From positions 186,001 to 250,000 of IMG/VR virus record IMGVR_UViG_3300020202_000061: a DNA stretch of 64,000 nt. The stretch is one strand, 5' to 3'. How positions within the stretch are numbered: position 1 is the stretch's first letter; every line of letters starts with the position of its first letter. Below the pieces are notes generated by a model. It ran no database searches. It had not been told where the DNA came from and saw only the letters and a list, made by a program, of their open reading frames with translations. Below, one piece after another: positions 4,344-49,327 of the stretch. Made by a program: the position numbers and the translations under genes.

Positions 4344-4408
4344 AGCTTAGACCCCCACGATATTTAGGAATCCCAGGCCCATCCCGGTCATGACTTGTAA
4401 ATATTAGC

Positions 4409-4840
4409 ATGGGAAGAGCCTGGAAACGACGCAAAGAGAACCATCGCAAGCCACCGAGGCCGATGAGTTGGGACTGTCCGCGAGGCAATTGTCGTTTCTG
4501 TGGCGGGGAGATCATCGAGGACGGAAAGAGAAACAACCGCAAGCATTGGCACCAAAAGTGTGCGGACTTCTGGGGGCTCCTGAACAACCCGGTGGACATG
4601 AAACGCTATGTGTTCGTCCGCGAGAAGGGCACCTGCCAGGGTTGCGGATGGTTCCGGCCACTCATGGGCGACTTCGATGCGGACCATCGTAGACCCCTAT
4701 TTGAGGCTTACGGAGACCTTCGGTACTGGGAACCAATCAACGTCGATCTCCTCTGCAAGGAATGCCATAAGAAGAAAACCAAGGAGGACATGATCCTCTG
4801 GAGGAAACTACAGGAAACCCCTCACACCCCCACTAAGTAG
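4409..4840 (+). CDS. HNH endonuclease with N-terminal Zn-binding motif
   Basis: CRFCG..HQKC; CQGCG...DADHRRPL...NVDLLCKECHKKKT. Confidence 0.85.
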   Translation: MGRAWKRRKENHRKPPRPMSWDCPRGNCRFCGGEIIEDGKRNNRKHWHQKCADFWGLLNNPVDMKRYVFVREKGTCQGCGWFRPLMGDFDADHRRPLFEAYGDLRYWEPINVDLLCKECHKKKTKEDMILWRKLQETPHTPTK

Positions 4841-4844
4841 GAGT

Positions 4845-4934
4845 GGAACTGTGTGTGAGTGGTTGAAACAACTCGCCTCCGACGCGAGCAGGCCCGCAAG
4901 GGCCTCGCGGGTTCGAATCCCGCCGGTTCCGCCA
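4845..4934 (+). tRNA. Ser-type (long variable arm, G73) tRNA with CCG anticodon
   Basis: GGAACTG/CGGTTCC-G-CCA, variable arm GGCCC-GCAA-GGGCC, loop CT-CCG-AC. Confidence 0.8.
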
Positions 4935-4982
4935 ACTTGAAACTCTTAACCCCCCGGATATATTGTTCCGGGGGGATTTTTT

Positions 4983-5213
4983 ATGACCGCATATACCTAC
5001 GAATTCAACGGCGCAATCACTCTGTTTGAGATCGACGGACACACCCACATCAACGTTCGCAATCGCGAACTCGGTGCGAGTGCGATCCTGGCGCTTCCAG
5101 ATTCAATGGAGGCTCCTCCCTATGACGACAAGCTCGGAACCATGTACGCCGGAGGCAGTGTCCGCATCACTGTGGAGATCAATCCCGAAACCGTGGTCCG
5201 CTTGAACAAGTAA
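4983..5213 (+). CDS. hypothetical protein
   Basis: compact ORF after the tRNA terminator. Confidence 0.6.
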   Translation: MTAYTYEFNGAITLFEIDGHTHINVRNRELGASAILALPDSMEAPPYDDKLGTMYAGGSVRITVEINPETVVRLNK

Positions 5214-5226
5214 CCAAGAAGAAACC

Positions 5227-5457
5227 ATGCTCAAAAAATCCATCATCCACGAAGAAGGCGAAGGCTATACCGTTCACACCGGGGACACCCTGACCTACCA
5301 GTTTGTCAGCAACGAAAGCCCGACCACACTCATGCTCAGCCGCAAGGTTGCAGAGATCGCACACGATTCGACCGTGACCCGCTACAAACGAGTCCGTGTC
5401 GAAATCTCGATTCTGCTGGAAGACGAGGAGTACACCGAAACCATCGAATCCGAATAA
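5227..5457 (+). CDS. hypothetical protein
   Basis: compact ORF in series. Confidence 0.55.
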   Translation: MLKKSIIHEEGEGYTVHTGDTLTYQFVSNESPTTLMLSRKVAEIAHDSTVTRYKRVRVEISILLEDEEYTETIESE

Positions 5458-5480
5458 ATATAAATCGGAGGGTTTCGGCC

Positions 5481-6008
5481 ATGAGTAAAAATGAACAGCG
5501 TCTGAGCTACACCGTGGAAAAATCTATTGGTGAGCATGATCCTCATGTTCTGGAGGACATCAAGTCGAGCCGTGAGAAGCTTGGTGAGTTCACCGTAGGG
5601 TTCTTCATGGAAGCGGTCTATGGCGAGGAGTATGCCAGAGCCATCCGTAAGGAAGTGGGTGTGCTCTACGAGAAGAAGCTCAAGGACGTGTCCATGGATG
5701 TGGTCAAGCAGGCCGATGGGTCGATCCGAACCAAGGTTGCAGGGGTCAATACGACACCGGATTCCGAGGAGAAGAAGAAGCACCTGAATGAGGTGTTGGA
5801 ACGACATGAGGACGGAGAGGTAGCGCGTTCGTCGGCCGAGAGCTATCGTCGTGTTCAGCAGACCACGATGGGTGTGAAACCCGAGCCGGAAGAAGATGAG
5901 GATGAGGGCGAGACCGATATGGTTGCGGCACTGAAGGCGCTCGCCAGCATGAGTCCAACAGAAAGAGAAGCCATCATGAAGTTGGCCAAGGCTATGGGGA
6001 AGAAGTGA
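5481..6008 (+). CDS. acidic hypothetical protein, late-type promoter
   Basis: TAAATA at 5455 and GGAGG before ATG. Confidence 0.7.
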   Translation: MSKNEQRLSYTVEKSIGEHDPHVLEDIKSSREKLGEFTVGFFMEAVYGEEYARAIRKEVGVLYEKKLKDVSMDVVKQADGSIRTKVAGVNTTPDSEEKKKHLNEVLERHEDGEVARSSAESYRRVQQTTMGVKPEPEEDEDEGETDMVAALKALASMSPTEREAIMKLAKAMGKK

Positions 6009-6247
6009 TGTCGAATGATTCGAGTTTGCCCGAGGAGATCGAACTAGATCGAGAAGAGGCGCGTGAACTTATTGCGAAGGTGTTGATCGCCACGTTGGTT
6101 GCGATTGTAGTTGGGTCCTTCGCCACGCTTTGGTTCAAGCTGGCTCCGATGACCGACCTCAAGATGCTGCTGGAGATCGTGTTCACGCCGATCATCGGCG
6201 TCATCGGCACCATCCTGGGCTTCTACTACGGAGCCCGCACCAGATGA
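6008..6247 (+). CDS. small two-TM membrane protein
   Basis: two hydrophobic stretches, basic C-terminus. Confidence 0.65.
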   Translation: MSNDSSLPEEIELDREEARELIAKVLIATLVAIVVGSFATLWFKLAPMTDLKMLLEIVFTPIIGVIGTILGFYYGARTR

Positions 6248-7471: not shown

Positions 7472-7543
7472 TTCCAAATCCTATTCGGTTGGTTTCGGAA
7501 TCAGCCTATTCGGGATTCCTGAATCCAAGGTAGACAAAACCTC

Positions 7544-7572: not shown

Positions 7573-7581
7573 CTTGCTCAT

Positions 7582-8176: not shown

Positions 8177-8402
8177 TTTCCGGGCAACTGGATCAGTTCC
8201 TCCCACAAATGTCTGTGCTGTTCGAGACAAGCCGCCGAGTAGGTGCAGGTAGTTTTGCCCCCGCAGTACGTGAGGAACTGGGGGTTTGATCGGGACGGTA
8301 GATAAACGGATAAGGACCTACCGAGACGACTACCTAAAGCCCTCAGAGTCTTTGGCCTAACTGGCACACCACGCGGCATTCCAGCAATCTCTAAATATGA
8401 GC

Positions 8403-10397
8403 ATGAGATTGCTGGACCTTTTCGAAGATCACAATCATCCAGAACGCGGTGACGTTCGTTGGGCCGTGGGAAAGCATCTTTCCCGCGCCACCCGCGTTGG
8501 CACGAAGGACCAGAACGATCCCGATTACGCCCTGGTTTGGGGCAACATCAAGGACATCATGGACAATGCCGTCCCGAATATGGCGTTGGACCTGAATGAT
8601 CCGATGGGCGGGAAGAACCGGATCGGCCAGCGCGTGCCCAACGCGAAACTGCACTGGTCCGGTGGCAACTACATGGACCCGTCTCTGATCTACATGCGTG
8701 GCTCGAAGGTGGACTTCCAGGATGGTCGTCATCGCCTTGTCGCGGCCTACCAGCTTGGTCATCGCTATGCCCCGGTTTTGGTAGATCGAGAGGGACTCTC
8801 GGCGTTCCAGAAGGTCGTGCGTGTCAGACAGGACGAGGCACTGATCGAGGCCCAGATGATCCAGATTCCGGTGCGAACCCTAGGGGCTCGGCACATCGTG
8901 AAGGTCTGGAAGAATCCCACCCTGAGCCAAACTCGCGCCCTGGTGAACCGCATCCAGCAGGTTCGTGCACTCGATGATCGTCATGGAAACTTCTACTTGT
9001 GGGATGCACGTGATAGTTATCACGGTGCGATCCGTCGCGAACTTGGTCTGGGTCAGGCCGATTCGACCCGGCTCTACATGACCCCTCAGGGCGTGGCGAG
9101 CGATTACCTGGAGTGGAACCAAGACCCGGACTACGTCATCAACGGAATTGGTGTGTGGGCAGAGGACGATGAGTATTGGCGCACCAATAAGGGTACGGTG
9201 CGTGCGCTCGGCTCGGCTCGAATCACCGAGGATGCTAAATCATTCGAGATCACCATGTCCCATCATGGTGGTCAGGTTCGTGTCTGGAAGAATCCCACGC
9301 GTTCGCAAACACAAGCACTGGTCGAGCGTCTCGGCGAGGTTCGCGCGATCTCCACGATGAATGGGGATTTCTATCTGTGGCCTGCATTCCAAGCGATCCA
9401 CGAGACCGTGGCGAAGGAATTGGGTGTCAAAGGCGTACGGTTCTTTTTGACACCGATTGAGGGCGATAAAGAAGCATCGGAGTGGACGGGGCCGCCGTTG
9501 GAGATCAACGGGATTTGGGCCTGGGCCGAACCCGGTGCATATGCGGCCTGGAAATATCCGGGCACGGTTCGTGCACTGGGTCCGGCACGGAGATCGCGGT
9601 ATCCAAAGAATTGGAAAGAGGACATCGATGAGAGCCTGCATATCACCGAAGCACAATCCTTTGAGGTGGTTCTGGGCGACCACGGTTCGTGGAGAGTGCG
9701 AGTCTGGAAGAATCCCACCGCCAGTGAAACTCGCGCTCTGGTTGACCGTTTCAAGGAAGCACGCGGAATGGCCGAGGGTGCAGATTTCTATCTCTGGGAA
9801 GCATTCGAGGCGATCCATTCGACTATCGCTGGAAAGCTTGGCTTCCAGGGGGTTCGGTTCTATCTGACACCGGTTGGTTATGAGAAGTATGCGACCGAGT
9901 GGGATGGTAAACCCGAGACCTACAATGGCCTCTGGGTCTGGGCCAGTGATGAAGAGGGTTGGGGTTATCCTGGTGTACAGCGTGCACTCGGAATGACGCA
10001 ACCACAACTGCCTCAACGACAAATGGCGGCTGAATCCGCACGGATGCAAGTCGTGCAAAATCCGTTCGACCACAACAAGGAGTATCGAGTCTGGGTGAAT
10101 CCAGTTGCCTCGCAGACACGCGCCTTAGTTCATCAACTGGGGCAGGTTCGCGCCATATGTACGGGTAAGAACCTCTACTTGTGGAACGCTAATGACGCCA
10201 CACACGCGGACATGGAATACGCCTTGGATAAGGGTGGTGAACGGCTTTACATGGTCCCCAAAGGCGGGAAGCTCGAAGCCCCCGAGTGGGAAGGTCCGCC
10301 TGATCAGATCGTCAACGGAATCGAGGTCTGGGCGACCTGGGCCAAGACTACTCTGAAATTACCCGGCGTGGCTCGTGCGCTCGGATTGCCTTATTGA
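8403..10397 (+). CDS. late protein: ParB-like N-domain plus four ~120-aa VWKNP repeats
   Basis: DGRHRL motif; four repeats VW(K/V)NP..S.TRALV...YLW...RALG; TAAATA 5 nt upstream. Confidence 0.75.
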   Translation: MRLLDLFEDHNHPERGDVRWAVGKHLSRATRVGTKDQNDPDYALVWGNIKDIMDNAVPNMALDLNDPMGGKNRIGQRVPNAKLHWSGGNYMDPSLIYMRGSKVDFQDGRHRLVAAYQLGHRYAPVLVDREGLSAFQKVVRVRQDEALIEAQMIQIPVRTLGARHIVKVWKNPTLSQTRALVNRIQQVRALDDRHGNFYLWDARDSYHGAIRRELGLGQADSTRLYMTPQGVASDYLEWNQDPDYVINGIGVWAEDDEYWRTNKGTVRALGSARITEDAKSFEITMSHHGGQVRVWKNPTRSQTQALVERLGEVRAISTMNGDFYLWPAFQAIHETVAKELGVKGVRFFLTPIEGDKEASEWTGPPLEINGIWAWAEPGAYAAWKYPGTVRALGPARRSRYPKNWKEDIDESLHITEAQSFEVVLGDHGSWRVRVWKNPTASETRALVDRFKEARGMAEGADFYLWEAFEAIHSTIAGKLGFQGVRFYLTPVGYEKYATEWDGKPETYNGLWVWASDEEGWGYPGVQRALGMTQPQLPQRQMAAESARMQVVQNPFDHNKEYRVWVNPVASQTRALVHQLGQVRAICTGKNLYLWNANDATHADMEYALDKGGERLYMVPKGGKLEAPEWEGPPDQIVNGIEVWATWAKTTLKLPGVARALGLPY

Positions 10398-13546: not shown

Positions 13547-13674
13547 CGTAGTTTTTCCTCGTTGAGGTAATCTCGGGAGTATTTACGGTCGGGTTGGAAT
13601 TTCATGACTTTCCCGAAGGTTGAAACCTTAGGATTTCCCTTGCATTTTCAAATGAACATGTTAAATTAAACTCC

Positions 13675-13986
13675 ATGCTTCATCAGGTGTTTACGAACGA
13701 CCACTACCGTTTCGATCCGGACGATCCGAAATCGAAGCTATTGGCGATTCAAGCCGGGATCGATGCGTGGGTCGCGATCAACCAGGGTGTGGCGAACGAA
13801 CAGGGTTGCCGTAGGGGGTTGGCCCGGATCGGAAGCTTCCTCGGGGTGTTGCCGACCTACCGGATTCTCAGCATGCTATGGGTGCAGGAGAATCCCACCC
13901 AGGTTCCTATTGTGGACACGCATCCGGATATTCCCTACGTGGGACGAAATACCGACGAATTACATTCGCACGGCCTCTTGGAATAA
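13675..13986 (+). CDS. hypothetical protein
   Basis: ORF after an AT-rich promoter region. Confidence 0.55.
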   Translation: MLHQVFTNDHYRFDPDDPKSKLLAIQAGIDAWVAINQGVANEQGCRRGLARIGSFLGVLPTYRILSMLWVQENPTQVPIVDTHPDIPYVGRNTDELHSHGLLE

Positions 13987-15429: not shown

Positions 15430-15475
15430 AAAACCTCTTGACATTCCTGCGAGAATCGCTAAATACCAGCGTGAT

Positions 15476-20344: not shown

Positions 20345-20410
20345 GTCTGAGGGATTTCTTTACGGAAACCTCTTGACAAGAACAAGGGGTTTCCGTAAAT
20401 ACCCTTTGTC

Positions 20411-20487: not shown

Positions 20488-21234
20488 TCAGTTCATGATG
20501 TCCTCGACAATCCCCCGATAATCGACCGGGGGATTTTCGTTTTTGGGCTTCCGAATCTCCTCACGGAGCTTGGCCAGGATCGGATCGTGCTGGAATAGTT
20601 TGTATGCGCCGGGATGCAGATCGATGTGCCGGAGCCCATCAAATCCCACCCAAATATAGTCCACGGCTTTTTCCGAGTTCAGATCGGGATCAAACTCCTC
20701 CTGCACCACATGGAGGTAATTGTGGTAGACGTGGTCCTGATTCTCGTCCACCCACAACGGGAGTAGTCTCCGGTGATCCACGCGGAACCTGCCGTCCTCA
20801 AGCGCCGCCCTTGCGGCTGCAATGGGTGCGGTTTCACCCTGTGCGACCGAACTCCCCCACAGACCCGCCAGCCAGGGATTGTCCTGCTCGGTCCGTCTGA
20901 TCTGCATGAGGAATCGACGAGTTTTGCGGCAGAACACCAGGAGACCACCGACCTGACGTTTCCGAACAGGCGGTGGTAGCAGATCGGTGAATTTCTTCTT
21001 CGAGGTCCGCTCGGGTCGAATGAAATTTTCCAGGTCCTTGCCAACGATGAATTCGATGAACCGAGGTTGGCTCGGATAGATCAGGAACACCGAGCGCAAT
21101 TCCTGAATCTTGTTCTGGTTCAGAAAATCCACCAACAACTTCTGTGCCACGCTGGGATAATCCCGGTAGACACGTGCGACACGCTTGATGTCGTCGTAGC
21201 GAATTGTGGCGTCTTTGGTCCGCAGGCGTTTCAT
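20488..21234 (-). CDS. NUDIX-fold protein with degenerate box
   Basis: GGLLVF..RFLMQIRR..GET..AAARAALED; TAAATA and GGAGG upstream. Confidence 0.6.
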   Translation of the reverse strand: MKRLRTKDATIRYDDIKRVARVYRDYPSVAQKLLVDFLNQNKIQELRSVFLIYPSQPRFIEFIVGKDLENFIRPERTSKKKFTDLLPPPVRKRQVGGLLVFCRKTRRFLMQIRRTEQDNPWLAGLWGSSVAQGETAPIAAARAALEDGRFRVDHRRLLPLWVDENQDHVYHNYLHVVQEEFDPDLNSEKAVDYIWVGFDGLRHIDLHPGAYKLFQHDPILAKLREEIRKPKNENPPVDYRGIVEDIMN

Positions 21235-21290
21235 TAGAGCCTCCGTGATATTTAGGTTGAAACCCCAGGTTTTTCTCTTACATCCCCAAG

Positions 21291-22028
21291 ATGTTCGAGA
21301 TTTCCAATGGGATAGTTCTGCGCACGAGCATTCTGGAGTTTCTTCCAGAATGCTGGCGAGCCCTACCCACACCGGAAGAGTTCTACGGCATCGACTGGCG
21401 CGAGGTGCCGATATCGACAATCTATGCCGACCTCTCTCATCACAGTTACGAGGAGAAATTCCACTATAACTGTGAGAATCGTAGTGGGCAGGCCACGCGC
21501 ATCAGTGAACCCAATTGGGAACGCCAAGAGCTTTGGGGCGCGGCTAAGACGAAAATTCCCACAACTCCACTTCAATGGACCCACAATCGTGGTGTGCTTG
21601 GCTCGCGTTGCTATGAGGGTTTGGTGCAACCGGCCGTGCGCAATTCCTATCTGGGTGTTTTCATGCGGAATGGGATCATCCACAATGATTACTCTCAACG
21701 CGCTGTCAAGAGTCTTGCGGATGATTATCGAGGGATTGTATTACCGCTGGCCCCAGTCGGGACTATGCGAATGACTTTGAATTGCCGAGCTTACAGTGAG
21801 CATTGGATCGATGGCGTGCACAAGAGTGTCATAGCGGAGAATGCTTACGTGGTGTTCTACGACACCCACGGCGTGCGCTTCCGCAGGTATATCCCGCGCG
21901 ACGACATGGACTGGTCCGGATTTTATTTCTCACCCAACGCGGAATACCCAAATGCCACGGACAAGATGATCTTTCTGTCAAAACTCCGGGAATTGACAGA
22001 GAAACCCAAAGCTGTTATGTTTCTTTGA
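21291..22028 (+). CDS. hypothetical protein
   Basis: 245-aa ORF. Confidence 0.55.
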   Translation: MFEISNGIVLRTSILEFLPECWRALPTPEEFYGIDWREVPISTIYADLSHHSYEEKFHYNCENRSGQATRISEPNWERQELWGAAKTKIPTTPLQWTHNRGVLGSRCYEGLVQPAVRNSYLGVFMRNGIIHNDYSQRAVKSLADDYRGIVLPLAPVGTMRMTLNCRAYSEHWIDGVHKSVIAENAYVVFYDTHGVRFRRYIPRDDMDWSGFYFSPNAEYPNATDKMIFLSKLRELTEKPKAVMFL

Positions 22029-24722: not shown

Positions 24723-25044
24723 TTGCGTGGGCCGGAAAAAAGAGATTCCGGCCCAAATTTTTTGGAACCGAATCCCAGGTTCAGGAGTTTACGGATTCAT
24801 AACGAACCACAATGGAGTGTAAAAAGATTCTTAATCTACATTTTCCCTATTGACGGAATCTAAACGACTCGCTACGATAGGGAACGACTATGGTGTAAAC
24901 TTTCAAAGTGGAGCCGAATTCCCCCCGGCTCCCAACACGAGCCAGGACTCTTCCCCCCAAGGGTCCTGGCTCTTCTTTTCTGGTAAAAGAAAAACTCTTG
25001 ACATTCTCGGGATTCTCGCATAAATACTCCCTGCGACACGGTTT

Positions 25045-25871: not shown

Positions 25872-26267
25872 ATGAAAATCAGACATCTCACAATGGGCTA
25901 TCAGGCATACTTCGTGCCGCGCACGGTCATCGACACGTTGGCCATAGGGTTTCCGCCGCGATTCCCCAAGTTTGATCCGCACCACGTGACCATCGTCTTT
26001 GGGGTGACCCAGCAGGAACCGCTCCCAGAGGGACTCGCGGAGATCAAGATCGTGGGCTATGCGAGTGACCGTAAGGGAATCGAGGCGTTCGTGTGCTCGG
26101 TGAACGGGACGGAGAAGCGTCCGGATGGTCAAACCTATCATATTACCTGGAGCTACGATCCTGCTCAGGGTTATGCGCCGAAGAACTCGAATGATCTGAT
26201 TCAGAAGTATGGCTGGGTCAAGGTTAATACGGGCGTGCGGTTCCACGCCCAAGCGAAATTCATTTAA
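25872..26267 (+). CDS. 2H phosphoesterase family protein
   Basis: two HxT motifs (HHVTI, YHITW) about 65 aa apart. Confidence 0.75.
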   Translation: MKIRHLTMGYQAYFVPRTVIDTLAIGFPPRFPKFDPHHVTIVFGVTQQEPLPEGLAEIKIVGYASDRKGIEAFVCSVNGTEKRPDGQTYHITWSYDPAQGYAPKNSNDLIQKYGWVKVNTGVRFHAQAKFI

Positions 26268-26689
26268 CGTTGCGGGCGTTGGAGCTTCTGCAAGTCCTGC
26301 GGAGCCAATTTCTCCACGGTGCCAATGGTGATGGAATTGCTAAATGCCTTCACTAGGCTTTCCAGATTGATCGCTCCGACCTCACTCAGCTTGGCCAAAA
26401 CACCCACGGAGACCTCTACGTCATGTAGTTCCACGTCGATCTCAACTTGTCCGGTCTTGGGATCGATATCCACGCTGATCTCCCGGATTTCTCCAGCGAT
26501 TCCTGCCTTCTGGTAGAGACCGAGGTATTTCTGCTTATAGACTTTCTCGATAACAATCTGGCGGTCGAAAATCATGTCGTTCTCGGCGTCGATGCGTGCC
26601 TGTTCATCGTCATCACGGATTGGCGGGATGATTTCCTGGGCTTCGGTGAGCCCAGCCAGTTTACGGATACGTTCGAGTTCCTTGTCCAT
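26264..26689 (-). CDS. late protein with RKLAGLTEA motif
   Basis: TAAATA 5 nt before ATG; MDKELERIRKLAGLTEAQE. Confidence 0.7.
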   Translation of the reverse strand: MDKELERIRKLAGLTEAQEIIPPIRDDDEQARIDAENDMIFDRQIVIEKVYKQKYLGLYQKAGIAGEIREISVDIDPKTGQVEIDVELHDVEVSVGVLAKLSEVGAINLESLVKAFSNSITIGTVEKLAPQDLQKLQRPQR

Positions 26690-26740
26690 GCTCATATTTA
26701 GGGCCTTGATTATTCCTTGGGTTTTGACTAATATTGGTTC

Positions 26741-27070
26741 ATGCCAGTTCAGGAAGTATATTGGGGTGTCCCCTATCAGATCATCGACGGTCGTCAGACC
26801 TACTTCGATATCTACGAGAGGAAGTGGCTGACCGAGGCCAAGGTGAACGGGAACAAGGGCAACGCGCTTCGTCTGAGAATCCACGAGCGCCAACCCGAGG
26901 ACCCACCCAGCACGTACTGGGGCTGGCTTCGTACGGACGATGACGCATACATAATGATCCAGCCGGTGAGGCTTTTCTTTGACATGTGCTTCCCGTACGG
27001 TCCGAAGATCGAAGAGGAAAAGGGTAAAGGTCGCGCCGTGAATCTTCACGTCGAGCCGTGGCCGGAGTAA
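26741..27070 (+). CDS. hypothetical protein
   Basis: divergent ORF. Confidence 0.55.
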   Translation: MPVQEVYWGVPYQIIDGRQTYFDIYERKWLTEAKVNGNKGNALRLRIHERQPEDPPSTYWGWLRTDDDAYIMIQPVRLFFDMCFPYGPKIEEEKGKGRAVNLHVEPWPE

Positions 27071-27137
27071 ATATGAGCATGATCCACGAGAATCACAAGG
27101 CAGGTTTCCAGTAGTGTAAACTACTGAGGAATCTGAA

Positions 27138-27794
27138 ATGTTCACTGCTGATTGGTCCGGTAACCTCGGACCGTGCCGCCTCGTCCGCCACACCGGGGAA
27201 ACCTGGAGCTACGAGAATCTCGACGCGCTGGTTCGCGACAACCACAACATCCTGATCAAGAATCTACTCTCGGACCGCCCTCCGCTACTGAGCGGGGTGC
27301 GCCCGAAGAACGAGTACGTCCGCATCGACGATCACCACGAGTATCGTCGCCGCATGATGAAGGACTACGGCTACGACCCATTCGCTCCGTGGGATCGTCC
27401 CTGGTACGTGGTTCTGGATGAACTCGACCTGATCGTGCCGCCCTGGAAGGTCCTGGAGCGTGCCTACGCCCTGCGTCTGTTCGACCGCTGGTATTGGCCC
27501 TGGTATACACCGGGTGTGGATCGCAAGACGCGCAAGCGCACCTACATGTTCCGTCAGGGCGTGGTGCCCGGCACCGGCCACAGCAGGGGTCGTCACCGCT
27601 GCTACATGCGCCGTCCTCACACCACGGCCGAGCGCCGTCAGTACGAGCGGGACCTTGTCGATGAAGATTTAGAGGATTTCCCCCAGCTTCGCGTGAGGAA
27701 TCGTCACCTGCGTCATTCCTATGACGATATCCCTCGCAACAAGCCTCGGAAGTCCTGGAAAAGCCAGCGCAAAACCCAGTACCGTCCGACTTGA
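27138..27794 (+). CDS. Arg-rich hypothetical protein
   Basis: GAGGA RBS; C-terminal SWK..RKTQY. Confidence 0.65.
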   Translation: MFTADWSGNLGPCRLVRHTGETWSYENLDALVRDNHNILIKNLLSDRPPLLSGVRPKNEYVRIDDHHEYRRRMMKDYGYDPFAPWDRPWYVVLDELDLIVPPWKVLERAYALRLFDRWYWPWYTPGVDRKTRKRTYMFRQGVVPGTGHSRGRHRCYMRRPHTTAERRQYERDLVDEDLEDFPQLRVRNRHLRHSYDDIPRNKPRKSWKSQRKTQYRPT

Positions 27795-30918: not shown

Positions 30919-31956
30919 TTATTCGGCCGCTGCCTTCTGCTCGACGCGATCCCGGCCATACTGGATACCGGGCTTATTCGTGGCTGAGAAACGCTGCGAC
31001 TTGATCCTGGTCCACCCCTGAGGATCAATGTTCCGGAACCGGATTTGGTTCCCGAGGGTGTGGAACTTGTTGCCCTCGCTGTCGTAGAGCCGAATCTCCT
31101 CACCATCACCGAACAGAAACGATTCTTGATTGTACTTCGCACACAGGTAGATGGCGAACTTCAAAAACGCATTCAGGTTGAGTGTGCCCAGATTCCGTGT
31201 GGGTAGAACCAGAAACCGCTGCTCCTCATGAGGGCGATTCTCTTCCTTCTCTTGATACCCACCCATCACCGGGATATACCGGACTGCCTCCTGAGAGAGG
31301 TCGGTGCGAAGTTGGTGGGTGAGTCTCTTGTTGAGACGATCATTCTTGGGTTTATCCTGGACAAGACCACGCGCCTCGGGGCTACGCGAGGCCGAAATCG
31401 CGAAGAACGGAGTCCCTGCCTTGATCTTCTGCACGATACGTGAGGCACCCGCACCGGCCTCCATCAGACCAGCACGACGACGAATATCAGCGATTTCGAT
31501 GTCCTCGGCGGCCATCCGACCCGGACGCGGCGGCACACCGTGTTTGATGAAGCGCTCGATCCCGTCCTGATCAAGGATACGATGTTCCTCACCACGACCG
31601 ATGGTCGTGCGTGGTGCACGAGCCACGATGATCAGGCGTTGAATGCCTGGAATCTGATCGGCTAGAAACTTTGTGGCCCGACGCAGGTCCTTCCAATCAC
31701 GACCTTCCAGGTTCGAACCCACATCAGGTTTACGACGGTCGAACGCCAGACGCACCCAGCCGTGGCTGAACATCACGTCCAGTGTGACCGGGTCATAATC
31801 GCCCTGGATCGCATCGTCGAGTTCCTCAGGATCGACCCCGTAAACCTCAGGACGCTTTTGCACATCTCCGGTATGGCTGTTCGATCCGAACGGAATCGTC
31901 ACCAATTCCCCGGTTTTCGCGTTATACCAATGACGGTCGGACTGATACAAGCTCAT
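30919..31956 (-). CDS. late two-domain protein with internal RRRAGLMEA linker
   Basis: TAAATA 5 nt before ATG; C-domain GGYQE..EQRFLV..KYNQES pattern. Confidence 0.7.
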   Translation of the reverse strand: MSLYQSDRHWYNAKTGELVTIPFGSNSHTGDVQKRPEVYGVDPEELDDAIQGDYDPVTLDVMFSHGWVRLAFDRRKPDVGSNLEGRDWKDLRRATKFLADQIPGIQRLIIVARAPRTTIGRGEEHRILDQDGIERFIKHGVPPRPGRMAAEDIEIADIRRRAGLMEAGAGASRIVQKIKAGTPFFAISASRSPEARGLVQDKPKNDRLNKRLTHQLRTDLSQEAVRYIPVMGGYQEKEENRPHEEQRFLVLPTRNLGTLNLNAFLKFAIYLCAKYNQESFLFGDGEEIRLYDSEGNKFHTLGNQIRFRNIDPQGWTRIKSQRFSATNKPGIQYGRDRVEQKAAAE

Positions 31957-32027
31957 GAGGATATTTAGGAATTCCGCTTGACGGATACCTATCCGGGAGT
32001 TAAATTTAATCTAGGAGGAGAAATAGC

Positions 32028-32657
32028 ATGAATTTTCAGGATTACAACAAGATTCGAGCCAGTCTGAGATATTGGCTACTGGGGAGAAACTATTTCAAAG
32101 CACTGAAGGCGATGGAAGTCGGTCTGGAATACCATACGGGAACCCGCAAGAACGGGGCTCCGGAGTTTATCCATCAGGTCAGTCAGGTCCAGTACGCGAG
32201 AACCCTCGAATCCCAGCTACTCTATCCGGAGGATACGTTCTGCACGATTTTCCTCCACGACATTGTCGAGGATCACAAGTATCCACGATCCGGCATCAAA
32301 CAGTTCGGCGATTCGGTGTATCGAGCGGTCGAACTCATGACGGATGCGGATGAGACGGGTGAGGATAAAGCCCTGGCTGACTATTTCCGCGCTATGGGCT
32401 ACGATCCCATCGCAAGTTTCGCCAAGGGTTGTGACCGTGTGCACAACTTCCAGACCATGATGGGTGTGTTCAAGCCGGAGAAGAAGGAACGCTACATCCG
32501 GGAGGGGACCGACCTGATTATCCCGATGCTGAAAATCGCTCGCAAGCAATTCCCCGAGCAAGAGCAGGCATATCACAACGTCACGCATATTCTGAGGATG
32601 CAGATCGAACTGATCCAGTATTCCTTAACTTCGGAACTCCAGGAGACAGTTTCCTAA
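32028..32657 (+). CDS. HD-domain protein, RelA/SpoT-hydrolase (Mesh1)-like
   Basis: HTGTRKNG.PEFIH, FLHDIVED, KGCDRVHN. Confidence 0.85.
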   Translation: MNFQDYNKIRASLRYWLLGRNYFKALKAMEVGLEYHTGTRKNGAPEFIHQVSQVQYARTLESQLLYPEDTFCTIFLHDIVEDHKYPRSGIKQFGDSVYRAVELMTDADETGEDKALADYFRAMGYDPIASFAKGCDRVHNFQTMMGVFKPEKKERYIREGTDLIIPMLKIARKQFPEQEQAYHNVTHILRMQIELIQYSLTSELQETVS

Positions 32658-32698: not shown

Positions 32699-32776
32699 GG
32701 CGGTGTACTGCTTAGCGGCCTAAAGCGGGTGTCTCTAAAATACTGATCGCGGGTTCGAATCCCGCCACCGCCGCCA
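32699..32776 (+). tRNA. amber suppressor tRNA (CTA anticodon)
   Basis: GGCGGTG/CACCGCC-G-CCA; GGTGT-CT-CTA-AA-ATACT; own promoter at 32662. Confidence 0.82.
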
Positions 32777-40542: not shown

Positions 40543-40621
40543 TGCGGGCGGGAGGCATTTAGAGTTTCTCACAGCGCTCATAACGCTGCAAGCCGGGTGC
40601 GATATCCGGGCCTCGCAACCA
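40543..40621 (+). tRNA. tRNA-Met(CAT), initiator-like, atypical
   Basis: fMet-like 3' end CGCAACCA, CT-CAT-AA, T-loop TGCGATA. Confidence 0.72.
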
Positions 40622-40651
40622 AAAGGGACCTCCGGGTCCCTTCTTCTCTTT

Positions 40652-40723
40652 GGCGAATCCTCTGGTGAGGAGTCGGCTCTCATAAGGCTGATAGCGTGAG
40701 TTCGATTCTCCGATTCGCCACCA
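40652..40723 (+). tRNA. tRNA(CAT), Met or Ile2, shortened D arm
   Basis: GGCGAAT/ATTCGCC-A-CCA; CT-CAT-AA. Confidence 0.75.
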
Positions 40724-45002: not shown

Positions 45003-45003
45003 A

Positions 45004-45694: not shown

Positions 45695-45719
45695 ATAAAT
45701 ATCCCATGGAGGAACCCCC

Positions 45720-46184
45720 ATGGATATCCAACTTAGCCCACACTTTCGTATGTCCGAATTGGTACGTTCGGAGACTGCTGCCCGCCTCGGCCTGGACAAT
45801 TGGCCGCGCGAACCCCGAGTGATTGAAAACCTCCGTAGTACTGCCCTTCACATCCTAGAGCCGATCCGTGTTCAGTTCGGTATTCCCTTCGCACCAAATT
45901 CCGGCTATCGTAGTCCTGAGGTGAACAGGGCTACCGGGGGTTCCAAAACACGGCAACACATGATGGGACAGGCAGTCGATATCGAACTGCCGGGCGTTTC
46001 CAATCACTTATTGGCGGAATGGGTGCGGAAAAATCTACAGTTCGACCAAATCATTCTTGAATGCTATCGTCGCGGAATTCCCAACTCCGGATGGGTTCAT
46101 ATCCGGTACGCAAGCTCTTCGAATCGTCATCAAACTCTGACATTCATTCAGGGTCAGGGATATCTGCCGGGATTTGTTATCTGA
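45720..46184 (+). CDS. peptidase M15A family endolysin-like
   Basis: NSGYRS..VN..GG....QH..GQAVD..WVHI; TAAATA upstream. Confidence 0.88.
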   Translation: MDIQLSPHFRMSELVRSETAARLGLDNWPREPRVIENLRSTALHILEPIRVQFGIPFAPNSGYRSPEVNRATGGSKTRQHMMGQAVDIELPGVSNHLLAEWVRKNLQFDQIILECYRRGIPNSGWVHIRYASSSNRHQTLTFIQGQGYLPGFVI

Positions 46185-46959: not shown

Positions 46960-47249
46960 GCCGGTTCTGTCCGAACGCGATGCTGGCCTGCTACAACCCG
47001 AAGTGCGACAAGGGGTGTGCTCATCCCATGTTCCAGGCTGTTTACACGCTATCGATGGACCACAAGGACAAGAGCGTCCGCAAGGTTGTTGGAACCCTGA
47101 GTGAATGTCTGTCGGCGGCCAGTGAGATCGTGAAGCGCCCACCGCCGGGCACCCTCGACGTGATTCTGACCGATCCCCAGGGCGAGAAATTGTTCACCTG
47201 GGACCTGATCAAACACGCATCCTATCGGGGAAATACCGAGAATACTTGA
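46956..47249 (+). CDS. hypothetical protein, Cys-containing
   Basis: ATGA coupling. Confidence 0.5.
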   Translation: MSRFCPNAMLACYNPKCDKGCAHPMFQAVYTLSMDHKDKSVRKVVGTLSECLSAASEIVKRPPPGTLDVILTDPQGEKLFTWDLIKHASYRGNTENT

Positions 47250-47297
47250 CAATCCCCAGGGTTTCTGGTAGAATCCTCTTGCAATTCAGGAGGACCC

Positions 47298-47606
47298 ATG
47301 CCCGGCACCCGTGCGACCATCCGTCAGATGCTGAACTTCTTCAACGCGAATGTTCGGCTGGCCTTCGCCAAGCATCAAAATCGTGAGCAGTTCCTGGCCG
47401 GGTTCAAGCCGGACCTCCACGAGAAGCTGGGTACGCTCTACGATGACTATCACAAGCGTGTTCTGAACGCGCAGACCCTCCGAGACAAATGGTTGGCCGA
47501 TGGCAACGAGGCGGCAGAGCGCGGCAATCAGAAGCGTGCCGACTATTGCTACGCGAAGTCGCAGACCTGGACCGACCGCTACAACCGGTTGGTCGGTGAC
47601 GCCTAG
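47298..47606 (+). CDS. hypothetical protein
   Basis: AGGAGG RBS after promoter 47246; ends in TAG. Confidence 0.7.
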   Translation: MPGTRATIRQMLNFFNANVRLAFAKHQNREQFLAGFKPDLHEKLGTLYDDYHKRVLNAQTLRDKWLADGNEAAERGNQKRADYCYAKSQTWTDRYNRLVGDA

Positions 47607-47855
47607 ATGTTCACCCTGATCGTCCTCTCCTGCCTGCTCCCGACCACCTGCATCGAGGATCATTCCCCAGCGGATTACATCACGGAGGAACGGTGTTTCG
47701 CCCAGGGTGCGATCCTGGCCGGGATGAATCGGGTCGAATTCGGTAGGATCGGCTGGGACTTTTCCATCGAACACACTCTGATCTGCACAGATCAATTCGG
47801 GGAGCAAATCGTCCGCAAACATACGGATTTGGTTGACAAATCGCTGGGTTTCTGA
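47607..47855 (+). CDS. small exported protein
   Basis: ATG directly after an in-frame TAG; hydrophobic N-terminus with Cys. Confidence 0.55.
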   Translation: MFTLIVLSCLLPTTCIEDHSPADYITEERCFAQGAILAGMNRVEFGRIGWDFSIEHTLICTDQFGEQIVRKHTDLVDKSLGF

Positions 47856-47890
47856 TAGACTTGGCGAACCAAATCAGGAGAAACCACCGC

Positions 47891-48229
47891 ATGATGTTGC
47901 TGACCAAGGAACTGCGCCGCGAGCTTTTGAAGAACGGCACTCTGTCAGAGTCCGAGAAAGAGAAGCTCAAACCCGTCGTGAAGTTCTTCAACCCAACCGG
48001 CGCGGCCACGTGGTTGATCACGGAAATGGACCCGGACGGGGATCGCCTGTTCGGCCTTTGCGATCTCGGCTTCGGGGAGCCCGAACTCGGCTACGTCAGC
48101 CTGACCGAGCTTCAACTCACTCCAGTGCGTTTCGGTTTGGGGATCGAGCGTGATCGCTGGTTCACCCCGAACAAGACCCTCCAGGAATACGCCGACGAGG
48201 CACGCGAGAAGGGTCGCGTCCAGGCATGA
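47891..48229 (+). CDS. DUF2958 family protein
   Basis: PVVKFFNPTGAATWLITE..LFGLCDLG.G.PELGYVSL.EL. Confidence 0.9.
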   Translation: MMLLTKELRRELLKNGTLSESEKEKLKPVVKFFNPTGAATWLITEMDPDGDRLFGLCDLGFGEPELGYVSLTELQLTPVRFGLGIERDRWFTPNKTLQEYADEAREKGRVQA

Positions 48230-48447
48230 GACGCAAGCCGCGCCCCCTCGGTGACTATACTGACAAGGCATGGCTGACCGGCTGGGATTACTGCATCATG
48301 CTCCGCCGGATCAATGAGAATCCCTATACTCGGCGTCCCCAGCATGACGCGTTCCGACGTGGCTACAAGGCGTGTGAAAACAACGCCGTGAGCAGCTTGC
48401 GCACGGTGATGCGGCGGCGATATCCAGAAAGGTTGTTCGCAACATGA
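48226..48447 (+). CDS. hypothetical protein
   Basis: AW..GW....NPY.....AF.RGY (RMF-like pattern). Confidence 0.5.
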   Translation: MRRKPRPLGDYTDKAWLTGWDYCIMLRRINENPYTRRPQHDAFRRGYKACENNAVSSLRTVMRRRYPERLFAT

Positions 48448-48617
48448 CTGCGATTTTCATCATGTTCGTGTTTGCATTCATTCTGGTCCTGATCCTGTTG
48501 TTCGGAGATTTGACCATCGAGCAAGCAGGGGCAATACAGACCTACGGTGTCTCAGTCATGGGTCTGTTTACGGTCGGCGTCCTGATCTACGAAGGCTTGA
48601 AGCTCTAGGAGGCATCC

Positions 48618-49064
48618 TTGTTGAAAGGTCCCTACGAACTCGAACTCTGCCGGTTTCGCATCGGTGAGCGCGTGCGGGTGAAAGAGTCCAGCAAGGCCCG
48701 CTGGTGTCGTGACAAGCCTTTGGTCGTGTTGAACCTGAGCTACGCTGATGGCCAATCAGCAATACCCGGCAAGCTCGTGGTGGGTTGTGCGGTCGAACGA
48801 CCGTTTGAAGCCTACGGGCCGATCATACACGAGTTCGCCCAGGATGATCTGGAACCGAATCCGTTCCCGGCTCTGACCGAGGAACATCTTCCAGATGGTT
48901 GGTTCCCGGCCAGTGGTGGAGCGGAGAAGCCCTTCAAGTCGCGTTCCGGCCGCACCCTGCTCTACTGCTACAATCCGGCCAAGCACGCCCACGCCTACCT
49001 GGATCAGGACAACGACATTATCCTGACCGACAAGGAAGCGGCTGATCTCATGCAGATGACGTAA
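48618..49064 (+). CDS. hypothetical protein
   Basis: AGGAGG RBS before TTG. Confidence 0.6.
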   Translation: MLKGPYELELCRFRIGERVRVKESSKARWCRDKPLVVLNLSYADGQSAIPGKLVVGCAVERPFEAYGPIIHEFAQDDLEPNPFPALTEEHLPDGWFPASGGAEKPFKSRSGRTLLYCYNPAKHAHAYLDQDNDIILTDKEAADLMQMT

Positions 49065-49072
49065 ATATTCGC

Positions 49073-49327
49073 ATGCCAAGATACGTCCTTGAAGTCCCCA
49101 CATTGGCCACGAACGGGAGCATCAATTCCCCGGCTCTGAAATCGTTTGAAGTTCCGAACGATAAGGAAGCGCGTGACTATTGTGTTCTTCACGCCAGAAG
49201 CCTGTATACGCTGTTCCACAGCAGCCAAAACAATCCGTTCAGTTCGGGCGGCACCAACTGGACCAAAATCGCTCAATGCCGCCGTACAGACAACGATAAG
49301 ATCGTCTGGAGATACGGTCAGTATTGA
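49073..49327 (+). CDS. hypothetical late-type protein
   Basis: TAAATA 5 nt before ATG. Confidence 0.55.
   Translation: MPRYVLEVPTLATNGSINSPALKSFEVPNDKEARDYCVLHARSLYTLFHSSQNNPFSSGGTNWTKIAQCRRTDNDKIVWRYGQY

What the first reader, a model, noticed from the sequence alone, without database searches (positions are those of the whole stretch)
4398..49075. Late genes appear leaderless: TAAATA-TNNNC-ATG with exact 5-nt spacing
Seen: TAAATA followed by exactly 5 nt (TTAGC, TGAGC, TGAGC, TCCTC, TTCGC) and then ATG with no Shine-Dalgarno, at 4409(+), 8403(+), 26689(-), 31956(-) and 49073(+). A sixth case at 27079 opens only a 12-codon ORF. Other TAAATA genes (4343-, 21234-, 45720, 55723, 61830) instead have a leader with a purine-rich RBS. 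Knowledge: T4-type late promoters are -10-only TATAAATA boxes. Inference: +1 falls on the A of ATG, defining a leaderless late mRNA class, possibly linked to the atypical initiator-like tRNA at 40543.
Basis: partly seen in the sequence, partly recalled or inferred. Interest (0 to 1): 0.66.

Follow-up and report, generated by a model that had tools for sequence, protein, structure and literature searches.

The report
Leaderless late genes in jumbo phage
In an uncultivated 347-kb T4-type soil phage, a subset of genes has the six-base late promoter TAAATA exactly five bases before the ATG, so their mRNAs most likely begin at the start codon with no ribosome-binding leader; four related phage lineages share this habit, but no transcript data exist to prove it.

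Summary
TAAATA-N5-ATG occurs 6 times in the window (0.04 expected) and 19 times in the 347,504-bp phage genome, against 0-4 at spacings 0-13. Seventeen of the 19 open ORFs of at least 60 codons.

- The phage encodes a gp55-like late sigma.
- TAAATA without a -35 box precedes tail sheath, portal and baseplate wedge genes.
- T4 geometry puts +1 on the sixth base after the box, the A of ATG.
- Position -1 is a pyrimidine in 44 of 49 cases across three genomes, and starts are ATG 49, GTG 2, TTG 0.
- Orthologues switch between N5-ATG and TAAATA plus an SD-bearing leader.
- Relatives G001, G002 and G006/G007 share the excess; Atu_ph07, Phosso, SCTP-2, GAP32 and T4 do not.

Leaderless starts are not confined to late genes: 13 of 45 sigma70-type promoters sit 6-7 nt before an ORF-opening ATG.

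The tRNA at 40543 is a degenerate homologue of initiator-type tRNAs in the two relatives examined. Its link to leaderless translation is only correlative.

No RNA data exist, so the start sites remain inferred. This is a new variant of known kinds (T4 late promoters, leaderless mRNAs).

The parts
4398..4411 (+). Late promoter box TAAATA, spacer TTAGC and ATG (predicted +1 at 4409). It is back to back with the TAAATA at 4361-4366(-) in a 65-bp divergent gap.
4409..4840 (+). Leaderless gene, 143 aa, HNH endonuclease.
   Evidence: PHROG 11604 E 2.2e-32 with the match starting at residue 6; Pfam HNH
8392..8405 (+). TAAATA-TGAGC-ATG (predicted +1 at 8403).
8403..10397 (+). Leaderless gene, 664 aa, function unknown. 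The N-terminus MRLLDLFE resembles a capsid-targeting tag. The G001 homologue is also N5-leaderless.
26687..26700 (-). TAAATA-TGAGC-ATG on the minus strand (predicted +1 at 26689).
26264..26689 (-). Leaderless gene, 141 aa, function unknown. Codon score is 0.34 per codon, against 0.08 for the upstream in-frame extension.
27068..27114 (+). TAAATA-TGAGC-ATG opening an 11-codon mini-ORF. The TAA of the box is the stop codon of the 26741 gene. The transcript would carry a 59-nt leader for the SD-led gene at 27138-27794.
31954..31967 (-). TAAATA-TCCTC-ATG (predicted +1 at 31956), in a 71-bp divergent gap opposite the SD-led gene at 32028.
30919..31956 (-). Leaderless gene, 345 aa, with a C-terminal S-adenosylmethionine lyase family domain.
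   Evidence: Pfam PF23780 E 6e-8
49062..49075 (+). TAAATA-TTCGC-ATG. The TAA is also the stop codon of the preceding ORF 48618-49064.
49073..49327 (+). Candidate leaderless ORF, 84 aa, with weak coding score and no family match.
4361..4366 (-). Late TAAATA box with a 17-nt SD-bearing leader for the 675-aa gene 2316-4343(-).
21249..21254 (-). Late TAAATA box with a 14-nt GGAGG leader for gene 20488-21234(-).
45696..45701 (+). Late TAAATA box with an 18-nt GGAGG leader for gene 45720-46184.
55690..55695 (+). Late TAAATA box with a 27-nt GGAGG leader for gene 55723-56148.
61807..61812 (+). Late TAAATA box with a 17-nt GGGGGA leader for gene 61830-62075.
26706..26743 (+). Sigma70-type leaderless candidate: TTGATT-N17-TAATAT-N6-ATG for the 109-aa gene 26741-27070. 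It is divergent from the 26689(-) leaderless gene across a 51-bp gap.
57684..57722 (+). Sigma70-type leaderless candidate: TTGACA-N17-TAGACT-N7-ATG for the 224-aa gene 57720-58394.
56971..57010 (+). Sigma70-type leaderless candidate: TTGACA-N18-TATTCT-N7-ATG for the 66-aa ORF 57008-57208.
21257..21293 (+). Sigma70-type leaderless candidate: TTGAAA-N16-TACATC-N6-ATG for the 245-aa gene 21291-22028.
13640..13677 (+). Sigma70-type leaderless candidate: TTGCAT-N16-TAAATT-N7-ATG for the 103-aa ORF 13675-13986.
60498..60515 (+). Extended -10 leaderless candidate: TGgTATAAT-N6-ATG for the 171-aa gene 60513-61028.
40543..40621 (+). Atypical tRNA with CAU anticodon: U1-A72 pair, irregular D and T arms, encoded CCA. 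It follows a TTGACC-N17-TAAGTA promoter and precedes a terminator-like hairpin. It is homologous to the initiator-type tRNAs of G001 and G002.

Best explanation
The window comes from an uncultivated soil jumbo myovirus with T4-type late transcription. Its gp55-like sigma most likely directs the host RNA polymerase core to a -10-only box, (C)CTAAATA, and transcription starts on the sixth base after the box, as at T4 late promoters.

At about 50 late genes this start lies 14-45 nt before the start codon and the leader carries a GGAGG-type Shine-Dalgarno sequence. At 17 genes (five in the window, plus one 11-codon mini-ORF) the box lies exactly 5 nt before ATG, so the mRNA begins with AUG. Such an mRNA has no leader and must be translated by direct recognition of the 5'-terminal AUG by ribosome plus initiator tRNA.

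The same design appears at the phage's sigma70-type promoters (TTGACA-N17-TAnnnT), there at 6-7 nt as sigma70 geometry requires. Leaderless initiation is therefore a general option in this phage and its close relatives, not a property of the late class alone.

What is shown directly: the motif, its spacing statistics, the sigma gene, the gene functions, conservation in relatives and the orthologue switches. What is inferred: the exact start site, gp55 dependence and the translation mode.
For: Spacing and position
- N5 occurs 19 times against 0-4 at spacings 0-13, and 17 of the 19 open at least 60 codons.
- TAAATA occurs 108 times against 26-42 expected from Markov models. Only 13 copies lie deep inside genes, which cover 81% of the genome.

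Late-promoter identity
- A gp55-like late sigma is present (phrog_234, E 3.6e-30), next to SbcCD-like genes resembling T4 gp46/47.
- TAAATA without a -35 box precedes tail sheath, portal, baseplate wedge and tail-fibre-like genes. The leaderless gp15-like tail sheath stabiliser is a late gene too.
- There is no TG or -35 signal upstream of these boxes.

Start-site geometry
- In the T4 gp55 open complex A-12, A-9 and A-8 are flipped out and the P23 scaffold reads TATAAATA-CTCCT-G. The box therefore spans -13 to -6 and +1 is the sixth base after it.
- The offset differs by promoter class as each geometry predicts: 5 nt for TAAATA-only boxes, 6-7 nt for sigma70-type boxes, where 13 of 45 promoters qualify.
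- Position -1 is a pyrimidine in 44 of 49 N5 genes in three genomes. At SD-led late promoters the predicted +1 is a purine in 37 of 48.

Translation signals
- Starts are ATG 49, GTG 2 and TTG 0, whereas 14% of all my gene calls start with GTG or TTG.
- The first 36 nt are less structured than internal windows of the same genes (-3.2 against -6.5 kcal/mol, p=0.001) and less than the starts of SD-led genes (p=0.011).

Genomic context
- Nine of the 17 sites face a divergent gene, five of them across only 65-82 bp. Two more sit directly behind hairpins of -27 and -30 kcal/mol.

Comparative evidence
- Orthologues keep TAAATA but alternate between N5-ATG and a 14-25-nt leader with an SD: gp15, g0_171936, g1_72188, g2_199042 and g2_111752.
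- The excess recurs in G001 (11 ORF-opening sites), G002 (21), G006 (14 against 2 control) and G007 (8 against 0).
- Domain matches start at or near residue 1: SLOG at 1-66, gp15 at residue 9, HNH at residue 6.
Against: - No transcript 5' end has been seen. Only two soil DNA runs hold the sequence.
- The upstream TA of T4's TATAAATA is not conserved; only 3 full octamers occur in the genome. No gp45-type clamp was found with PF02916. The T4 mechanism may therefore differ in detail and the start site could be shifted by a base or two.
- Six of the 17 sites lie 8 nt after a co-directional gene, with the TAA of the box serving as its stop codon. There, termination-reinitiation on a polycistronic mRNA could also serve.
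- About 40% of the N5 genes share an N-terminal peptide tag, so some sites may be copies of one promoter-plus-tag module rather than independent events.
- The 49073 ORF is weakly coding, and 27079 opens only 11 codons.
Confidence: 0.75

Rival explanations
1. These genes are translated from longer polycistronic mRNAs. The TAAATA before the ATG is then the stop codon region of the upstream gene, or an A/U-rich ribosome-binding enhancer occupying the usual SD position, and initiation occurs by termination-reinitiation or SD-independent 30S binding.
For: In 6 of 17 G000 sites, 5 of 11 G001 sites and 4 of 21 G002 sites, the TAA of the box closes an upstream open frame of at least 60 codons, leaving an 8-nt gap. 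TAAATA occupies the position where an SD would normally lie.
Against: - Nine of 17 sites face a divergent gene across short gaps, so no co-directional upstream message is available.
- The spacing is exactly 5 nt, whereas SD-like or enhancer elements tolerate several spacings.
- The same hexamer sits 14-45 nt upstream of SD-led structural genes.
- Pyrimidine at -1 with A at +1 is a transcription-start signature.
Confidence: 0.1
2. The repeated exact spacing is mainly common descent. A mobile cassette of late promoter plus start codon plus a short N-terminal targeting peptide has been shuffled between genes, so the count overstates independent selection for leaderless starts.
For: - Six sites in G000 share the exact 14-mer TAAATATGAGCATG.
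- About 5 of 17 N5 ORFs in G000, about 5 of 11 in G001 and about 11 of 21 in G002 start with M[KR][LI]x[DE]L[FL]E-like peptides on otherwise unrelated proteins.
- T4-type phages are known to shuffle internal-protein genes that carry capsid-targeting sequences.
Against: - The gp15, HNH, SLOG-NADAR, SAM-lyase-family, 786-aa and other N5 genes lack the tag.
- Tagged proteins also occur with SD leaders: G001 has 6 strict tags, none at N5.
- Identity does not extend beyond the 14-mer.
- Even if true, the cassette would still yield leaderless mRNAs.
Confidence: 0.1
3. The pattern is a chance or compositional artefact of an A/T-rich hexamer near start codons.
For: None beyond the fact that intergenic DNA is A/T-richer than coding DNA.
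Against: - Shuffles expect 0.04 in the window, against 6 observed.
- Neighbouring spacings give 0-4.
- Reversed-pattern controls give 1-2 against 14-25 in the relatives.
- Markov expectation for TAAATA is 26-42, against 108 observed.
Confidence: 0.01

Closest known systems
Bacteriophage T4 late promoters (gp55/gp33/gp45 system)
   Same: - A -10-only A/T box with no -35 element, read by a small diverged sigma (a gp55 homologue is present here).
- The box precedes virion structural genes.
- T4 geometry puts +1 on the sixth base after the box.
   Different: - The box is TAAATA, usually preceded by C or CC rather than TA.
- No gp45-type clamp was detected with PF02916, and gp33 was not tested.
- In T4 itself TAAATA-N5-ATG is not enriched (10 against 5 control). 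I know of no report of leaderless T4 late mRNAs (own knowledge), and full-text searches found none for T4-like or jumbo phages.
Predicted ATAAATA late promoters of Rak2-like jumbo phages (vB_PcaM_CBB, GAP32)
   Same: - Related phages by baseplate wedge similarity.
- A gp55-like sigma and an ATAAATA motif before structural genes; gp33 and gp45 were not found there either (PMC5259590).
   Different: No N5-ATG excess in GAP32 (5 against 8 control). The CBB paper does not mention leaderless genes.
Leaderless genes with a -10 motif adjacent to the ORF in Deinococcus-Thermus and Actinobacteria
   Same: A -10 hexamer a fixed few bases before the start codon is the accepted sequence signature of leaderless genes, and was verified experimentally in D. 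radiodurans (PMC12340547; PMC3160421).
   Different: Those are host sigma-A promoters of cellular genes. Here the signal belongs to a phage-specific late sigma class (5 nt) as well as to sigma70-type promoters (6-7 nt), in a phage whose other genes use strong SD sequences.
Classical leaderless phage mRNAs (lambda cI from PRM and similar)
   Same: The transcript starts at the A of AUG and is translated without an SD (own knowledge of the literature; Brock et al. 2008 is cited).
   Different: Those are single regulatory genes. Here roughly 30 genes per genome are involved, across two promoter classes. Transcript 5'-end mapping found no leaderless transcripts in the jumbo phages phiKZ (dRNA-seq) and AR9.
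T4 capsid-targeting sequences of internal proteins
   Same: A short N-terminal peptide ending in (L/I)xE, shared by otherwise unrelated late proteins, together with a gp21-type prohead protease.
   Different: The peptide sequence differs from the T4 tag, and neither packaging nor cleavage was tested. This is a side observation, not part of the leaderless claim.

Membership tests
T4-type late transcription | A gp55-family late sigma is encoded | tested here: met
   Genome 89265-89759(-), 165 aa: phrog_234 'late sigma transcription factor' E 3.6e-30; Sigma70_r2 25 bits. Homologues occur in G001 (51% identity) and G002 (38%).
T4-type late transcription | Promoter is a -10-position A/T box with no conserved -35 element | tested here: met
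   86 TAAATA copies lack a TTGACA-like -35. The frequency matrix shows no -35 and no TG extension.
T4-type late transcription | Full 8-bp consensus TATAAATA | tested here: not met
   Only 3 TATAAATA copies occur in the genome. The positions before TAAATA are mostly C.
T4-type late transcription | The box precedes virion structural (late) genes | tested here: met
   Tail sheath, portal, baseplate wedge, tail-fibre-like, virion structural protein and gp15-like genes.
T4-type late transcription | Sliding-clamp activator (gp45) and co-activator (gp33) | tested here: inconclusive
   PF02916 (DNA_PPF) gave no match. gp33 was not searched. The related phage CBB also lacks detectable homologues.
T4-type late transcription | Transcription starts on the sixth base after the box | not testable with these tools
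   No RNA run holds the phage. The geometry is taken from the T4 structure paper.
Leaderless mRNA | The primary 5' end coincides with the A of the start codon | not testable with these tools
   No RNA data. Inferred from promoter geometry and the -1/+1 base preference.
Leaderless mRNA | A promoter -10 element at a fixed short distance from the start codon, leaving no room for an SD | tested here: met
   Exactly 5 nt in 17 ORF-opening cases against 0-2 at each spacing 0-13; 6-7 nt for sigma70-type promoters.
Leaderless mRNA | The start codon is AUG | tested here: met
   ATG 49, GTG 2 and TTG 0 at N5 in three genomes.
Bacterial initiator tRNA (for the tRNA at 40543) | CAU anticodon and homology to initiator tRNAs | tested here: met
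   CAU anticodon. It shares the 5' UGCGGG and 3' CGCAACCA ends with the G001 and G002 tRNAs, which open xGCGGGGUGGAG.
Bacterial initiator tRNA (for the tRNA at 40543) | Mismatch at positions 1:72 (C1 x A72) | tested here: not met
   U1-A72 pair in G000 and G001; A1 x A72 mismatch only in G002.
Bacterial initiator tRNA (for the tRNA at 40543) | Three consecutive G:C pairs closing the anticodon stem | tested here: inconclusive
   The pairs are G:C, C:G and G:C, so three strong pairs but not GGG:CCC. G001 has G:C, G.U, G:C. G002 has none.
Bacterial initiator tRNA (for the tRNA at 40543) | Canonical tRNA fold | tested here: not met
   It does not reach E 0.01 against Rfam RF00005, whereas the neighbouring tRNA-Leu does. 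ARAGORN draws irregular D and T arms.

The most novel reading that the evidence does not exclude
A clade of uncultivated soil jumbo T4-type phages has built a parallel, phage-favouring initiation route. Dozens of early and late genes are transcribed as leaderless mRNAs, and the phage supplies its own variant initiator tRNA (U1-A72 or A1xA72, altered anticodon stem) and, in this genome, an IF3 homologue. Phage messages would then still be translated when SD-dependent initiation is shut down or targeted by host defence. Many of the late leaderless genes would encode capsid-targeted proteins that are ejected into the next host.
Probability: 0.15. Interest if true: 0.8.

Novelty: new variant of a known kind. 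Interest (0 to 1): 0.58.

Why it matters
T4-type late transcription and leaderless translation are each well studied, but I found no report of them combined. If 5' mapping confirms it, this clade would show three things.

First, a phage-specific sigma class can be fused directly to start codons, and this happens repeatedly in evolution, because orthologues flip between zero leader and an SD-bearing leader.

Second, it yields a simple sequence rule, box-N5-ATG, for calling the true starts of late genes in such metagenomic phages. Standard gene callers mis-start them: the ORF listing starts the 8403 gene two codons upstream at 8397, inside the box, and my own greedy ORF caller extended the 26689 gene to a GTG upstream and failed to call five N5 genes (window 4409, 49073; genome 126647, 274084, 308548).

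Third, it offers a natural system for asking why a phage with strong SD usage keeps a leaderless subset, and whether phage-encoded initiator tRNA or IF3 tunes that choice.

Tried and rejected
Searches that found nothing
- Megablast and tblastn of the 664-aa leaderless gene against the phage collection gave no match. The search for related loci in IMG/VR found no relative of it.
I did not use read laying, because contigs cannot show transcript ends.

Cultured relatives
- Atu_ph07 (15 against 9 control), Phosso (3 against 2), SCTP-2 (24 against 19), GAP32 (5 against 8) and T4 (10 against 5) show no N5 excess. The feature is therefore not general to T4-like or Rak2-like phages.

Translation factors
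- An IF3 homologue is present in G000, and also in Atu_ph07 and Phosso, but it is absent from G001 and G002. It does not track the leaderless habit.
- No ribosomal protein S21 was found.

Initiator-type tRNA
- A BLAST of the G001 tRNA found a homologue in G002 but none in Atu_ph07, Phosso, SCTP-2 or GAP32. This is a weak correlation from few, related genomes and a 77-nt query.

Host inference
- The IF3 homologue has only hits of 41% identity or less, scattered over many phyla. The host remains unknown.

Alternatives considered and rejected
- An extended -10 (TGn) promoter reading of TAAATA was rejected, because there is no TG upstream.
- The longer 309-aa reading of the 26689 frame was rejected on codon score, and because the + strand ORF 26741-27070 scores better across that stretch.

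Full report
**What the window is**

The window is bases 186001-250000 of a single 347,504-bp IMG/VR virus record with 54.5% G+C, estimated about 90% complete. ARAGORN finds 30 tRNA genes in the window and 55 in the genome. The only public runs that hold the sequence are two soil metagenomes, and neither is an RNA run.

A 1457-aa baseplate wedge protein has its best matches, at 34-39% identity, in Sinorhizobium phage Phosso, Agrobacterium phage Atu_ph07, Salicola phage SCTP-2 and the Rak2-like phages GAP32, CBB and BF. The genome encodes:
- a T4 gp15-like tail sheath stabiliser
- tail sheath and portal proteins
- a gp21-type prohead protease
- SbcCD-like proteins resembling T4 gp46/47, lying next to a 165-aa gp55-like late sigma (phrog_234, E 3.6e-30)
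- a second sigma70-family protein of 296 aa

It is therefore a distant T4-type jumbo myovirus of unknown host.

**The observation**

Genome-wide there are 19 at spacing 5, against 0-4 at spacings 0-13. Seventeen of the 19 open at least 60 codons, against 0-2 at each spacing 0-13. TAAATA is the most over-represented hexamer at that offset from ATG, 19 observed against 1.74 expected.

**What TAAATA is**

TAAATA occurs 108 times, against 26-42 expected from Markov models. Only 13 copies lie deep inside genes, which cover 81% of the genome. It appears in two settings.
- About 22 copies have a TTGACA-like -35 box 15-19 nt upstream (16-17 nt in most). Most of these stand in the tRNA-rich part of the genome, several directly before a tRNA gene.
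- 86 copies have no -35 box. Of these, 17 sit 5 nt before an ORF-opening ATG and 48 sit 12-45 nt before a called start that has an SD.

The boxes without a -35 precede tail sheath, portal, baseplate wedge, a tail-fibre-like protein and a virion structural protein. There is no TG extension; the two bases before the box are mostly C. Together with the gp55 homologue, this identifies a T4-type late promoter class. Related phages CBB and GAP32 were already predicted to use ATAAATA (PMC5259590).

**Where transcription should start**

T4 late promoters are an 8-bp box about one helical turn upstream of the start, with no -35 element (PMC2988020). In the cryo-EM open complex the flipped bases are A-12, A-9 and A-8, and the P23 scaffold reads TATAAATA-CTCCT-G (PMC7892883). 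The box therefore spans -13 to -6 and +1 is the sixth base after it.

Several independent features fit this placement.
- Position -1 is a pyrimidine in 15/17, 11/11 and 18/21 N5 genes of three genomes. At SD-led late promoters the base at the predicted +1 is a purine in 37 of 48.
- The start codon is ATG in 49 cases, GTG in 2 and TTG in 0. By contrast, 14% of all my gene calls start with GTG or TTG. That leaderless translation requires a 5'-terminal AUG is established knowledge.
- The first 36 nt fold weakly: -3.2 against -6.5 kcal/mol for internal windows of the same genes (p=0.001), and weaker than the starts of SD-led genes (p=0.011). The same holds in both relatives.
- Nine of the 17 sites face a divergent gene, five of them across only 65-82 bp that also hold the opposite promoter. 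Two more follow hairpins of -27 and -30 kcal/mol. No upstream co-directional message is available at these sites.
- Domain matches begin at or near residue 1: SLOG at 1-66, gp15 at residue 9 and HNH at residue 6.

**Comparative evidence**

Relatives found through the gp15-like and portal proteins show the same excess.

| Genome | Size | G+C | N5 result |
|---|---|---|---|
| G001 | 376 kb | 53% | 11 ORF-opening sites |
| G002 | 336 kb, terminal repeats | 42% | 21 ORF-opening sites |
| G006 | 360 kb | not measured | 14 sites against 2 in the reversed-pattern control |
| G007 | 204 kb | not measured | 8 sites against 0 control |

In G001 and G002 each spacing from 0 to 13 has 0-2 ORF-opening sites. 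G001 and G002 also carry the gp55-like sigma, the second sigma and the protease. Atu_ph07, Phosso, SCTP-2, GAP32 and T4 show no excess.

Orthologues keep the TAAATA box but alternate between zero leader and a leader carrying an SD.
- gp15 is N5 in G000 and in an 87%-identical contig, but TAAATA-N22 with GTGGGGG in G001.
- g0_171936, g1_72188, g2_199042 and g2_111752 behave likewise.

The distance is either exactly 5 nt or long enough for an SD. That is what a promoter-to-start-codon constraint predicts and what a ribosome-binding enhancer would not.

Leaderless design is not confined to the late class. Of 45 TTGAC-N16-18-TAnnnT promoters, 13 have an ORF-opening ATG 6 or 7 nt after the -10 hexamer, and almost none at other distances. 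That is the distance sigma70 geometry requires.

Six such candidates lie in the window, at 13675, 21291, 26741, 57008, 57720 and 60513. The genes at 26689(-) and 26741(+) are back-to-back leaderless genes in a 51-bp gap.

In total about 30 of roughly 440 genes appear leaderless, while most others carry GGAGG- or GGGGG-type SD sequences.

**The window's individual cases**

- 4409 is an HNH endonuclease.
- 8403 is a 664-aa protein of unknown function.
- 26689 is a 141-aa protein. Its frame stays open upstream, but the codon score there drops from 0.34 to 0.08 per codon, and the opposite strand scores better.
- 31956 has a SAM-lyase-family domain.
- 49073 is an 84-codon ORF with weak coding score. 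Its promoter's TAA is the stop codon of the preceding ORF.
- 27079 opens 11 codons and then leaves a 59-nt leader for the SD-led gene at 27138. It is either a leaderless mini-ORF or simply a late promoter with a fortuitous ATG.

These are not classic structural genes. They share their promoter class with the structural genes, and the leaderless gp15 gene elsewhere in the genome is a bona fide late gene.

**Rival explanations**

- Termination-reinitiation or SD-independent initiation on longer mRNAs is possible for the third of sites that directly follow a co-directional gene. It cannot explain the divergent sites, the exact spacing or the start-site base preference.
- A shuffled promoter-plus-tag cassette may inflate the count. 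About 40% of N5 ORFs in the three genomes begin M[KR][LI]x[DE]L[FL]E on otherwise unrelated proteins. However, untagged genes and SD-led tagged genes both exist, and the cassette would still give leaderless mRNAs.
- Chance is excluded.

**The tRNA at 40543**

ARAGORN calls a 79-nt tRNA with a CAU anticodon. It has a U1-A72 pair, three G/C pairs closing the anticodon stem (G:C, C:G, G:C), irregular D and T arms and an encoded CCA. It does not reach E 0.01 against the Rfam tRNA model.

Its ends match better-formed tRNAs in the two relatives, which open with the xGCGGGGUGGAG sequence typical of initiators (own knowledge). The G001 tRNA has U1-A72 and G:C, G.U, G:C closing the anticodon stem. The G002 tRNA has an A1xA72 mismatch.

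A BLAST with the G001 tRNA finds the G002 copy but nothing in Atu_ph07, Phosso, SCTP-2 or GAP32. The initiator-type tRNA therefore co-occurs with the leaderless habit in the three clade genomes checked for it (G006 and G007 were not examined). That is suggestive only, because the genomes are few and related, and the G000 copy looks degenerate.

An IF3 homologue in G000 does not track the habit.

**Comparison with known systems, and novelty**

The promoter class is a variant of T4 late promoters: the sigma is met, the -35-less box is met, the full octamer is not met, and the clamp is not found. The leaderless signature is the one accepted for Actinobacteria and Deinococcus-Thermus (PMC3160421, PMC12340547).

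Single leaderless phage genes are classic. In the jumbo phages phiKZ and AR9, however, mapped transcripts showed no leaderless mRNAs. My full-text searches found no report of leaderless late genes in T4-like phages.

I rate this a new variant of known kinds, moderately interesting, and well supported by sequence evidence. It remains unproven until 5' ends are mapped.

Noticed in passing
window 13640-13677, 21257-21293, 26706-26743, 56971-57010, 57684-57722, 60498-60515 (all +): Sigma70-type promoters (TTGACA-like -35, TAnnnT -10) sit 6-7 nt before ORF-opening ATGs. These are leaderless candidates of the early class. Genome-wide, 13 of 45 such promoters qualify.
   Followed up: partly
window, e.g. 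57684-57712 and 47246-47274; genome-wide list: Many early-type promoters share not only the two boxes but also the spacer: TTGACAaaccctggggtttctggTAGACT. This suggests a phage-specific factor, or the phage's 296-aa sigma, reads more than the hexamers.
   Followed up: no
window 15438-15466, 20373-20401, 24998-25026, 51939-51967, 61051-61079: TTGACA-N16-17-TAAATA promoters stand in front of tRNA genes. Their -10 box is identical to the late box, so the tRNAs might be transcribed both early and late.
   Followed up: no
window 8403 (MRLLDLFE); genome 286663(-), 52387(-), 274084(-); many ORFs in G001 and G002: Otherwise unrelated late proteins share an N-terminal peptide M[KR][LI]x[DE]L[FL]E ending in an (L/I)xE motif. 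This resembles T4 capsid-targeting sequences cut by the prohead protease, and a gp21-type protease is encoded at genome 67324-67755(-).
   Followed up: partly
window 4343(-) N-terminus, 26689(-) N-terminus, 61830(+) N-terminus, C-terminus of the 675-aa protein near 2316: A short peptide motif L(R/K)(R/K)(R/L)AG(L/I/V) recurs at protein ends and inside the SAM-lyase-family protein. Its meaning is unknown.
   Followed up: no
genome 312774-313376(-), i.e. L016:7774-8376(-), outside the window: A phage-encoded IF3 homologue (IF3_N 56.6 bits, weak IF3_C). It is also present in Atu_ph07 and Phosso, but not in G001, G002 or SCTP-2.
   Followed up: partly
window 32699-32776 (+): A well-formed tRNA with a CUA anticodon (a potential amber suppressor; ARAGORN labels it Pyl) sits behind a sigma70-type promoter. 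TAG is the stop of 54 of my 439 gene calls, so there is no sign of wholesale recoding.
   Followed up: partly
window 40622-40650 (+): A terminator-like hairpin (GGGACC-TCCG-GGTCCC followed by a T-rich run) lies between the atypical tRNA at 40543 and the next CAU tRNA at 40652. The atypical tRNA would thus be a one-gene transcription unit.
   Followed up: no
window 4361-4403; genome 70746/70792, 126608/126636, 308517/308537, 339350/339379: Late TAAATA boxes often come as back-to-back divergent pairs 20-46 bp apart, one arm leaderless and the other SD-led.
   Followed up: no
window 8397-8405, 26687-26695, 27073-27081: In the exact 14-mer TAAATATGAGCATG an in-frame ATG lies two codons upstream, inside the promoter box. 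ORF finders choose it: the ORF listing reports 8397. Under the leaderless model it is not transcribed.
   Followed up: partly
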